Shown piece after piece: positions 3,001 through 3,796 of a stretch of 64,000 nucleotides of DNA. The notes under the pieces are model-generated. The model was not told the origin of the DNA. It saw only the letters and a list, made by a program, of their open reading frames with translations, and did no database searches. This stretch comes from Ylistrum balloti (taxonomy: Eukaryota): NCBI RefSeq assembly GCF_031769215.1, contig NW_026782196.1:806001-870000 (forward strand). The letters are read 5' to 3'. Both the position numbers and the translations under genes were made by a program. How positions within the stretch are numbered: the first letter of the stretch is position 1; each line of letters begins with the position of its first letter.

Positions 3001-3121
3001 CTTTCCTACGACTATCAGCCAGTGCATTGGCCGCTGTTCGGCTCATGATCTTACATATGTATAGCGGACAGTTGGCCTGACTGGCTATTGTTACAGCTCT
3101 GTTTACAGCTTCACCTTCCAC
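3001..3121 (-). CDS. DPYS: DPYS/CRMP exon 8b, CRMP-type mutually exclusive exon ([41 protein letters not shown])
   Basis: TTTGTAG acceptor, AAG|GTGAGA donor, 121 nt, same phases as 8a, open frame. His is replaced by Lys, as in vertebrate CRMP2 ([24 protein letters not shown]). Missed by the ORF track. Confidence 0.93.
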
Positions 3122-3675
3122 CTACAAATCGCAACCAATCCCATCCACTGAAGTGTACTTACAATACAGCCTAGTCTGACTGTCAAGAGAAGTCTTCAAA
3201 ATCAGCCTTCATGTGTCCATAACATTTGACAAAAAACTGAAACCTTTCCTGATTATAAAACCTTTTAGTAGTAGGGTCCCTGTATATTTGTGTACATGTC
3301 ATTCATGTACAGTTTTCGGTGGGTTGTTTTGAATCCATCTCTGACTTTGTGATATCCAGCTAGATGTTAGAGCAAATGTCTGGATTCACTCTGCCAAAGT
3401 ATTCAAATAAATAAAATGTTACAATGACCATGCAAAATAAGCTTTCTACAAAATTTGCAAAATAGTCACTTTACCGAACAGATTTTCCATCACAAAAACC
3501 AAAAATAAACAACAACCAAAAACAAACAAATAACTTAAATTCAAGTTACATTTCAGCAATTTAAGTGTCCACGTAAGATAATGTGGATTTGTCTCCCTTG
3601 TACTGTAAACTAGAACAATCTGTTGTGGTAAAGTGACCACTTTGTGGGTTGAACATAAATAAATTGATATCAAAC

Positions 3676-3796
3676 CTTTTCTCCTTGCTGCAGTTACCAC
3701 TTTGGCTGCAGATTTGCTCATGACATGAACAACATAGATAGGACAATTTGCCTGATTGGCTATGGTGATAGCTCGTAGTGTGGCTTCTGCCTCCAC
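3676..3796 (-). CDS. DPYS: DPYS/CRMP exon 8a, enzyme (DHP)-type mutually exclusive exon ([41 protein letters not shown])
   Basis: CTAG acceptor, AAG|GTTTGA donor, 121 nt, phase 0 to 1. Retains the metal-ligand His of VHVMS and closely resembles human [16 protein letters not shown]...[11 protein letters not shown]. Confidence 0.96.

What the first reader, a model, noticed from the sequence alone, without database searches (positions are those of the whole stretch)
3001..3796. Enzyme / pseudo-enzyme switch: tandem mutually exclusive exons make either dihydropyrimidinase or a CRMP-like protein from one gene
Seen: two paralogous 121-nt exons 554 nt apart, both phase 0 to 1 with GT-AG sites. Including both or neither shifts the frame, so exactly one is needed for a productive mRNA. 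The shared exons supply five of the six binuclear-metal ligands (HxH, NSFK Lys, VHAE His, TDNC Asp). Exon 8a supplies the sixth (VHVMS); 8b has Lys there (CKIMS) and the AVNRA and CPLYI features of vertebrate CRMPs. Established: vertebrates split DPYS and CRMP1-5 into separate genes, whereas Drosophila CRMP makes both by splicing a pair of paralogous exons. Inference: the same switch operates in this apparently lophotrochozoan lineage, which would support an ancient protostome origin. Exon 8b is absent from the ORF track and likely to be missed by annotation.
Basis: partly seen in the sequence, partly recalled or inferred. Interest (0 to 1): 0.88.

Follow-up and report, generated by a model that had tools for sequence, protein, structure and literature searches.

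The report
Alternative exons switch enzyme's zinc ligand
A bivalve-like dihydropyrimidinase gene has two tandem, mutually exclusive copies of one exon, one with a zinc-binding histidine and one with lysine as in vertebrate CRMPs; the pair is kept in Mytilus and five other genomes, but it is apparently not the exon that Drosophila switches, so this trick probably arose twice.

Summary
Two paralogous 121-nt exons lie on the minus strand, 8a at 3796-3676 and 8b at 3121-3001. Both have AG/GT sites, and using both or neither gives an early stop. 8a carries the fourth His of the two-zinc centre (human His248, Pseudomonas His239). 8b has Lys there.

8b is not a dead copy. The same His-exon then Lys/Arg-exon pair sits between the same neighbouring exons in six other genomes, including Mytilus edulis. 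Every copy is 121 nt with intact splice sites. In 8b, non-synonymous change (0.11-0.33) is far below synonymous change (0.46-0.9).

The claim that this is the Drosophila switch, and so an old protostome trait, is not supported. The fly switch is published as changing zinc ligand 192. Here that residue lies in a single-copy exon. An ostracod gene has its tandem paralogous exons exactly over Lys159-His192. Two independent exon duplications are the likelier reading.

A tree of the exon peptides groups 8b with vertebrate CRMP exons, but this rests on two columns and is not decisive. A gastropod gene lacks 8b. One organism with the pair also has a separate paralogue that has lost two ligands.

No transcript or enzyme data could be reached. 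I found no publication on a mollusc switch. Verdict: a new variant of a known kind.

The parts
3676..3796 (-). Exon 8a, His type ([40 protein letters not shown]). It carries the fourth His of the two-zinc centre.
   Evidence: (best solved match is human DHP 2vr2 at 52 bits; the His aligns with His239 of 5e5c).
3122..3675 (-). Intron of 554 nt between the two alternative exons. It is too long for steric exclusion of the two splice events.
   Evidence: The same intron is 617-2937 nt long in five other genomes measured.
3001..3121 (-). Exon 8b, Lys type ([40 protein letters not shown]). Lys replaces the zinc-ligand His.
   Evidence: best solved match is CRMP2 at 44 bits, against 38 for DHP; purifying selection.
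5509..5577 (-). Shared upstream exon (KSQEMIDNGISGPEGHEMCRPEE). It ends in phase 0 and its donor serves either 8a or 8b.
1345..1501 (-). Shared downstream exon (..[51 protein letters not shown]). Its acceptor serves either 8a or 8b.
7131..7274 (-). Shared single-copy exon holding the carbamylated Lys (NSFK, Lys159) and the third His (VHAENG, His192). This is the segment that arthropods duplicate.
   Evidence: no second copy; aligns with 5e5c 145-190, so Lys150 and His183 there.
12482..12592 (-). Shared exon with the HxH zinc ligands (GGIDTHTH).
787..927 (-). Shared exon with the Asp ligand (TGTDNCTF). The 3' end of the gene runs off the start of the window.

Best explanation
This is a dihydropyrimidinase (DHP/CRMP family) gene, probably of a bivalve. 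Exon 8 exists as two tandem paralogous copies that are spliced in a mutually exclusive way. Both copies are 121 nt, so an mRNA with both or neither is frame-shifted and hits an early stop. Only one-exon mRNAs encode protein (shown from the sequence). The 8a isoform has all six ligands of the two-zinc centre and is the enzyme. In the 8b isoform a Lys (Arg in one other genome) replaces the His that holds the beta zinc. That is the replacement seen in vertebrate CRMP1-4. The 8b isoform most likely cannot assemble the two-zinc centre and would act as a non-catalytic, CRMP-like subunit, alone or mixed into tetramers (inferred). The pair is old and under selection in the bivalve lineage and in several unidentified relatives. 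It is a different exon from the pair that arthropods, including Drosophila, duplicated. The enzyme/non-enzyme exon switch in this family therefore probably arose at least twice (inferred from one ostracod locus plus a published fly residue number).
For: Anatomy and frame logic. Ligand mapping. PMC8860565 lists His59, His61, Kcx150, His183, His239 and Asp316 as required for metal binding, says the centre they assemble is essential for catalytic activity, and says loss of the beta zinc leaves the Lys uncarbamylated. Conservation: the same order (exon 7, His exon, Lys/Arg exon, exon 9) is present in L004, L005 and L006, Mytilus edulis L007, L014 and L015/L016. Every copy is 121 nt with AG and GT. 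Selection on 8b: pN 0.11-0.33 against pS 0.46-0.9, and dN/dS 0.08-0.33 where it can be computed. Introns of L004 and L005 cannot be aligned although their 8b exons keep 32/40 residues. Different exon in arthropods: (ostracod exons A of 62 aa and B of 70 aa cover native residues 144-201, and B has Ser at the Lys159 position). Lam et al. 2021 give fly residue 192 as His to Gly. The window has one copy of that exon.
Against: No transcript was seen, so use of 8b and its exclusivity rest on conservation and reading frame alone. Five of six ligands remain in the 8b isoform, so some activity is possible. The fly exons were not examined directly because Morris et al. 2012 is not held; the fly position rests on one published residue number and one gappy ostracod locus. 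Whether ostracod exon B is used is unknown, and both ostracod exons are multiples of 3. The L004 organism also has a dedicated paralogue that lacks two ligands, so 8b need not be the only CRMP-like product. The gastropod Elysia has a single exon 8.
Confidence: 0.6

Rival explanations
1. The 8a/8b pair dates from before the split of protostomes and deuterostomes. After gene duplication in vertebrates, DPYS kept the a-type exon and the CRMP genes kept the b-type exon.
For:: 8b matches CRMP2 better than DHP, and one search shows the reverse for 8a; an ML tree of 42 exon-8 peptides splits (a-type plus vertebrate DPYS) from (b-type plus vertebrate CRMP) with support 96/88. Exon borders and the 121-nt length are shared with single-copy genes and with vertebrate exon-level ORFs. 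L014, which has the pair, falls outside the mollusc and ostracod rows, though on only 71 columns.
Against:: a tree with all mollusc a and b exons held in one clade is not rejected (p-AU 0.098). Without columns 6 and 24 neither grouping is preferred (p 0.33 each). AVNRA and CPLYI are not conserved among 8b exons of other genomes. No pair was shown in a named deuterostome or cnidarian. Elysia lacks 8b.
Confidence: 0.15
2. 8b makes a working isozyme, for example with one metal or with altered metal or substrate preference, rather than a non-catalytic CRMP-like protein.
For: HxH, the carbamylated Lys, His192 and Asp326 lie in shared exons, so the alpha site is intact in both isoforms. The rest of the protein is DHP-like, not CRMP-like (for example [11 protein letters not shown]). 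In one organism a separate paralogue has lost two ligands, which could already fill the non-catalytic role.
Against: PMC8860565 states that the centre assembled by residues including His239 is essential for catalytic activity, and that loss of the beta zinc stops carbamylation of the Lys. The same position is Lys in vertebrate CRMP sequences, which a review describes as devoid of dihydropyrimidinase activity (PMC3645671). The b-type residue is Lys or Arg in all seven genomes, never a metal ligand.
Confidence: 0.15
3. The pair is homologous to the Drosophila CRMP exon pair, one switch inherited from the protostome ancestor.
For: Same gene family, same principle (paralogous tandem exons, one lacking a zinc ligand). 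Morris et al. 2012 is cited in PMC3650022 and in Lam et al. 2021.
Against: Fly ligand 192 maps to the VHAENG exon, which is single-copy here. The ostracod pair covers residues 144-201. 62 aa is about 10% of a protein near 590 residues, which fits my recollection of the Morris 2012 abstract (fly isoforms identical over 90% of their length; neither figure checked here). Exon 8 is 40 aa, about 7%.
Confidence: 0.07
4. 8b is an unused or decoy duplicate that only serves unproductive splicing, or nothing at all.
For: No transcript evidence here. The polypyrimidine tract before 8b in the window is weak. Inclusion of both exons gives an early stop.
Against: An open frame, exact length and splice sites are kept in seven genomes whose synonymous sites are saturated. 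pN is far below pS. Introns have decayed beyond alignment between L004 and L005.
Confidence: 0.04

Closest known systems
Drosophila melanogaster CRMP (CG1411): DHP and CRMP isoforms from one gene by a pair of paralogous, mutually exclusive exons (Morris et al. 2012, Genetics 191:1227; Lam et al. 2021, PMC7954323)
   Same: Same gene family. One gene has tandem paralogous exons, one keeping and one lacking a zinc ligand, and the rest of the protein is shared.
   Different: A different exon and a different ligand. The fly changes residue 192 (His to Gly, VHAENG segment); here it is His248 to Lys, two exons downstream. Here mutual exclusion is enforced by frame (121 nt), whereas the ostracod counterparts of the fly exons are multiples of 3. 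Fly function is shown by genetics; here nothing is tested.
Vertebrate CRMP1-4 (DPYSL1-4), non-enzymatic paralogues of DPYS
   Same: Lys at the His248 position in an exon with the same borders. The window's 8b also shares AVNRA and NCPLYI with CRMP2.
   Different: Vertebrate CRMPs are separate genes that have diverged along the whole protein and lost further ligands (for example GSAHCTF at the Asp position). The 8b isoform differs from the enzyme in 18 of about 570 residues. The C-terminal tail cannot be judged because it lies outside the window.
Vertebrate DPYS and bacterial DHPase/hydantoinase (cyclic amidohydrolases with a two-zinc centre)
   Same: The 8a isoform has all six ligands and matches human DHP best.
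   Different: These genes have a single copy of the exon.
PKM1/PKM2-type mutually exclusive exons that change enzyme regulation
   Same: Paralogous tandem exons of equal length swap one structural segment of an enzyme.
   Different: Both PKM isoforms are active enzymes. Here a catalytic metal ligand is removed.

Membership tests
DHP/CRMP family (cyclic amidohydrolase, Pfam Amidohydro_1) | Sequence homology to DHP/CRMP along the gene | tested here: met
   exon peptides hit DHP and CRMP chains at E 1e-11 to 1e-17; the orthologous Mytilus and Elysia gene models carry PF01979.
DHP/CRMP family (cyclic amidohydrolase, Pfam Amidohydro_1) | Six ligands of the two-zinc centre (HxH, carbamylated Lys, His, His, Asp) for an active DHP | tested here: met
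   Met for the 8a isoform: HTH, NSFK, VHAENG, VHVMS and TDNC are present and mapped to 5e5c numbering. The 8b isoform has five of six.
Mutually exclusive exon pair | Tandem paralogous exons of the same length and phase with their own splice sites | tested here: met
   The same holds in six other genomes.
Mutually exclusive exon pair | Joint inclusion or joint skipping is unproductive | tested here: met
   early stops in both cases.
Mutually exclusive exon pair | Transcripts contain exactly one of the two exons | not testable with these tools
   No RNA-seq access. Searches for short spliced fragments found nothing, and all recovered fragments were genomic ORFs.
Drosophila-type CRMP exon switch | The alternative exons are the ones that hold zinc ligand 192 | tested here: not met
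   that exon is single-copy here. Fly position. The arthropod pair is located in the ostracod. Fly exons were not examined directly.
Vertebrate-type CRMP (non-enzymatic) | No DHP activity, with several ligands lost | tested here: inconclusive
   Only His248 is replaced in the 8b isoform. Activity was not measured.
Vertebrate-type CRMP (non-enzymatic) | Long C-terminal regulatory tail with phosphorylation sites | not testable with these tools
   The 3' end of the gene lies outside the window.

The most novel reading that the evidence does not exclude
The His-type/Lys-type exon pair is ancestral to bilaterians. After gene duplication, vertebrate DPYS and CRMP genes arose by reciprocal loss of one alternative exon each, and bivalves still carry the undivided ancestral state. 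This would explain the origin of the CRMP family as isoform partitioning.
Probability: 0.15. Interest if true: 0.85.

Novelty: new variant of a known kind. Interest (0 to 1): 0.62.

Why it matters
It would be a second, apparently independent case in which one gene of the DHP/CRMP family makes either an enzyme or a ligand-deficient form by swapping a paralogous exon. Here a different zinc ligand is removed, and the replacement residue is the one vertebrate CRMPs fixed in separate genes. That makes the family a natural test of how enzymes turn into non-catalytic signalling or cytoskeletal proteins. The two routes to compare are isoform partitioning and gene duplication, and one of the organisms seen here uses both. 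It is directly testable with public mussel RNA-seq and a simple enzyme assay. It also marks an exon that gene models can miss or mis-join.

Tried and rejected
1. I tried to reach full-length invertebrate proteins with a profile of window exons on a vertebrate scaffold row (A2). Only vertebrate CRMPs were listed. Local simulations show that vertebrates outrank invertebrates even with an ideal alignment.

2. I tried alignments on a junk carrier row or with many fragment rows (A3, A4). MAFFT stacked the exons on each other, so these were not used for any search.

3. Searching with the 45-aa 8b ORF alone found no candidate sharing three words.

4. The exhaustive search with 8b returned mostly vertebrate CRMP exon fragments, but it gave the unnamed fragments that led to loci L001-L006, L010-L017.

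5. Morris 2012, Rawls 2006 and Deo 2004 are not held, and no paper on molluscs was found.

6. Regulatory clues led nowhere. GCAUG and YCAY counts near the exons show no shared pattern. Inverted repeats that could loop out one exon exist (for example window 3195-3215 with 4396-4416) but have no common layout across four genomes and are at chance level for AT-rich introns.

7. The exon tree cannot date the duplication.

8. A tree of shared exons could not name the unknown genomes. It only placed the window beside Mytilus, with support 88/78.

9. Earlier scan notes held nothing on this gene family.

Full report
**What is in the window.** On the minus strand lies the 5' two-thirds of a dihydropyrimidinase (DHP/CRMP family) gene. 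Its coding exons are at about 16915-16820, 13778-13704, 12592-12482, 9323-9156, 7274-7131, 5577-5509, 3796-3676, 3121-3001, 1501-1345 and 927-787. The 3' end runs off the start of the window.

Exons 8a (3796-3676) and 8b (3121-3001) are each 121 nt, preceded by AG and followed by GT, and 554 nt apart. They share 75/121 nt and 22/40 residues. A tblastn of every exon peptide against the whole window finds a second copy only for this exon (E 1.6e-12). Joining the flanking exons with either 8a or 8b gives an open frame. Skipping both gives a stop 13 codons into the next exon, and including both gives a stop 3 codons into 8b.

**Which residue is switched.** The shared exons carry HTH, NSFK, VHAENG and TDNC. 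The VHAENG exon aligns with Pseudomonas DHPase 5e5c residues 145-190, which puts its Lys at Kcx150 and its His at His183 (human Lys159 and His192). Exon 8a aligns with 5e5c 217-254, which puts its His at His239 (human His248).

PMC8860565 lists His59, His61, Kcx150, His183, His239 and Asp316 as the residues required for metal binding. It says the centre they assemble is essential for catalytic activity, and that loss of the beta zinc leaves the Lys uncarbamylated. 8b has Lys at this position. 8a matches human DHP best (52 bits, against 44 for CRMP2). 8b matches CRMP2 best (44 bits, against 38 for DHP).

**Is 8b a live exon?** No transcripts could be reached, so I looked for the pair in other genomes. 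An exhaustive search with the 8b peptide gave mainly vertebrate CRMP fragments. It also gave a dozen short ORFs with Lys, Arg or Asn at the ligand position. Their contigs and four named loci reached through the first coding exon were scanned with the window's exon peptides.

The order (exon 7, His-type exon, Lys/Arg-type exon, exon 9) is present in six further genomes:
- Mytilus edulis: L007, GCA_905397895.1, His-type 32498-32618, Lys-type 33443-33563.
- Three long unnamed ENA contigs: L004, L005, L006.
- One read-archive contig: L014, where the second exon has Arg.
- JGI metagenome contigs L015/L016, the same organism as L001.

In all of them both exons are exactly 121 nt with AG and GT. Between these genomes synonymous sites are saturated or nearly so (pS 0.46-0.9), yet 8b has pN of only 0.11-0.33, with dN/dS 0.08-0.33 where it can be computed. 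For comparison pN is 0.08-0.22 in 8a and 0.03-0.09 in exon 9. The introns of the two closest genomes, L004 and L005, cannot be aligned at all, while their 8b exons keep 32/40 residues. 8b is thus a translated exon under purifying selection. It evolves roughly one and a half times as fast as 8a.

**Whose genome is this?** The first coding exon is identical at all 32 real residues to Mytilus proteins, and the shared exons group with Mytilus edulis at support 88/78. It is not M. edulis itself, since 8a is 85% and 8b 60% identical. A bivalve is likely but not shown.

**Is it the Drosophila switch?** The literature I could read says the fly CRMP exon pair changes zinc-binding residue 192 from His (PA isoform) to Gly (PB isoform) (Lam et al. 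2021, PMC7954323, and its preprint). Residue 192 is the VHAENG His, which here sits in a single-copy shared exon.

The ostracod Cyprideis torosa (L009) has two tandem paralogous exons. Exon A is 25960-26145 (62 aa) and exon B is 26183-26392 (70 aa). Both have AG and GT. Exon A aligns with human DHP native residues 144-201. Exon B aligns weakly with the same stretch and has Ser at the Lys159 position.

Sixty-two residues is about one tenth of a protein near 590 residues long. That fits my recollection of the Morris et al. 2012 abstract, that the fly isoforms are identical over 90% of their length (neither figure checked here). The arthropod pair and the mollusc pair are therefore in different exons and remove different ligands. 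Two caveats apply. The fly exons themselves were not examined, because Morris et al. 2012 is not held. And the ostracod's exon 8 lies partly in an assembly gap, which I left alone.

**How old is the mollusc pair?**
- A tree of 42 exon-8 peptides splits a-type exons plus vertebrate DPYS from b-type exons plus vertebrate CRMPs with support 96/88.
- With locus-anchored and vertebrate rows only, the support falls to 77/77. A tree holding all mollusc a and b exons together is not rejected (p-AU 0.098). After dropping the two diagnostic columns, neither arrangement is preferred.
- The AVNRA and CPLYI matches to CRMP2 are features of this species' 8b, not of 8b exons in general. The only universal mark is the basic residue at the ligand position.

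An ancestral pair partitioned between vertebrate DPYS and CRMP genes remains possible but unproven. Convergence on Lys is at least as likely.

**Complications.**
- The gastropod Elysia marginata has one His-type exon 8 and no trace of a second copy in the flanking introns.
- The organism of L004 has a second gene 79 kb downstream on the same strand (L010). It has a single exon 8 with Asn at the His248 position and Phe at the Lys159 position, and it groups with its neighbour gene. That lineage therefore has both an exon switch and a dedicated ligand-poor paralogue.
- Another unnamed organism (L011) has a Lys-type exon as the only exon 8 of a CRMP-like gene.

'One gene makes both' is thus not the whole story for this family outside vertebrates.

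**Mechanism.** Shown: frame-enforced exclusivity, replacement of one beta-zinc ligand, and conservation. Inferred: the 8b isoform cannot build the two-zinc centre and acts as a non-catalytic, CRMP-like subunit. A mono-metal isozyme is the main alternative, because five ligands remain. How the choice is regulated is unknown. I found no shared Rbfox or Nova motif pattern and no shared RNA pairing layout.

**Novelty and score.** The principle is known from Drosophila. The exon, the ligand, the frame-based enforcement and the phylum are new as far as the held literature shows. Automatic isoform predictions may exist in public annotation that I could not reach. I rate it a new variant of a known kind, with interest 0.62.

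Noticed in passing
window 14313-16800 (minus strand): A 63-nt minisatellite starts right after the coding exon 16915-16820 and is stop-free for 660 codons in one frame. Further arrays lie at 17.6-18.8 kb (74-nt unit), 19.7-20.4 kb and 52.6-54.1 kb (87-nt unit).
   Followed up: no
window 100-820: An 82-nt repeat array carries degenerate copies of the 3' end of exon 927-787 (..GMGLRMSV*EKGV), as another first-stage note (s1-240742) describes. tblastn hits confirm the exon-derived origin.
   Followed up: partly
L007 19863-20491 (Mytilus edulis): Six tandem copies, about 95 nt apart, of the 5' part of the first coding exon (SAQSRLFIKGGRIVNDEKLF) sit just upstream of the real exon at 20622-20717. 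A second bivalve thus has an exon-edge-derived minisatellite in the same gene.
   Followed up: no
L007 25515-29498: A reverse-transcriptase retroelement sits inside an intron of the Mytilus DHP gene, and the public record splits the gene into a 155-aa and a 534-aa model.
   Followed up: no
L010 (same contig as L004, 79 kb downstream, same strand): A tandem paralogous DHP-like gene with Lys159 changed to Phe (NSFF) and His248 changed to Asn, Asp326 kept, and a single exon 8. It is a dedicated ligand-poor paralogue beside the gene that has the exon switch.
   Followed up: partly
L009 25960-26392 (Cyprideis torosa): Tandem paralogous exons A (186 nt) and B (210 nt, with a Gly/Arg-rich insert and Ser at the Lys159 position) cover the Lys159-His192 segment. 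This is probably the crustacean counterpart of the fly exon pair.
   Followed up: partly
L011 847-1609 (JGI 3300005978): A Lys-type exon 8 directly follows a CRMP-like exon (GPEGFLLSRPEE) with no His-type copy between them. This is a dedicated CRMP-like gene in an unidentified organism.
   Followed up: no
proteins P0147 and P0119: These are ORFs from unknown organisms in which exon 7 and exon 8 are fused, as in the DPYS-like fragments P0102 and P0150. One has Asn and one has His at the ligand position. Whether they are tandem copies in one gene was not checked.
   Followed up: no
   Followed up: no
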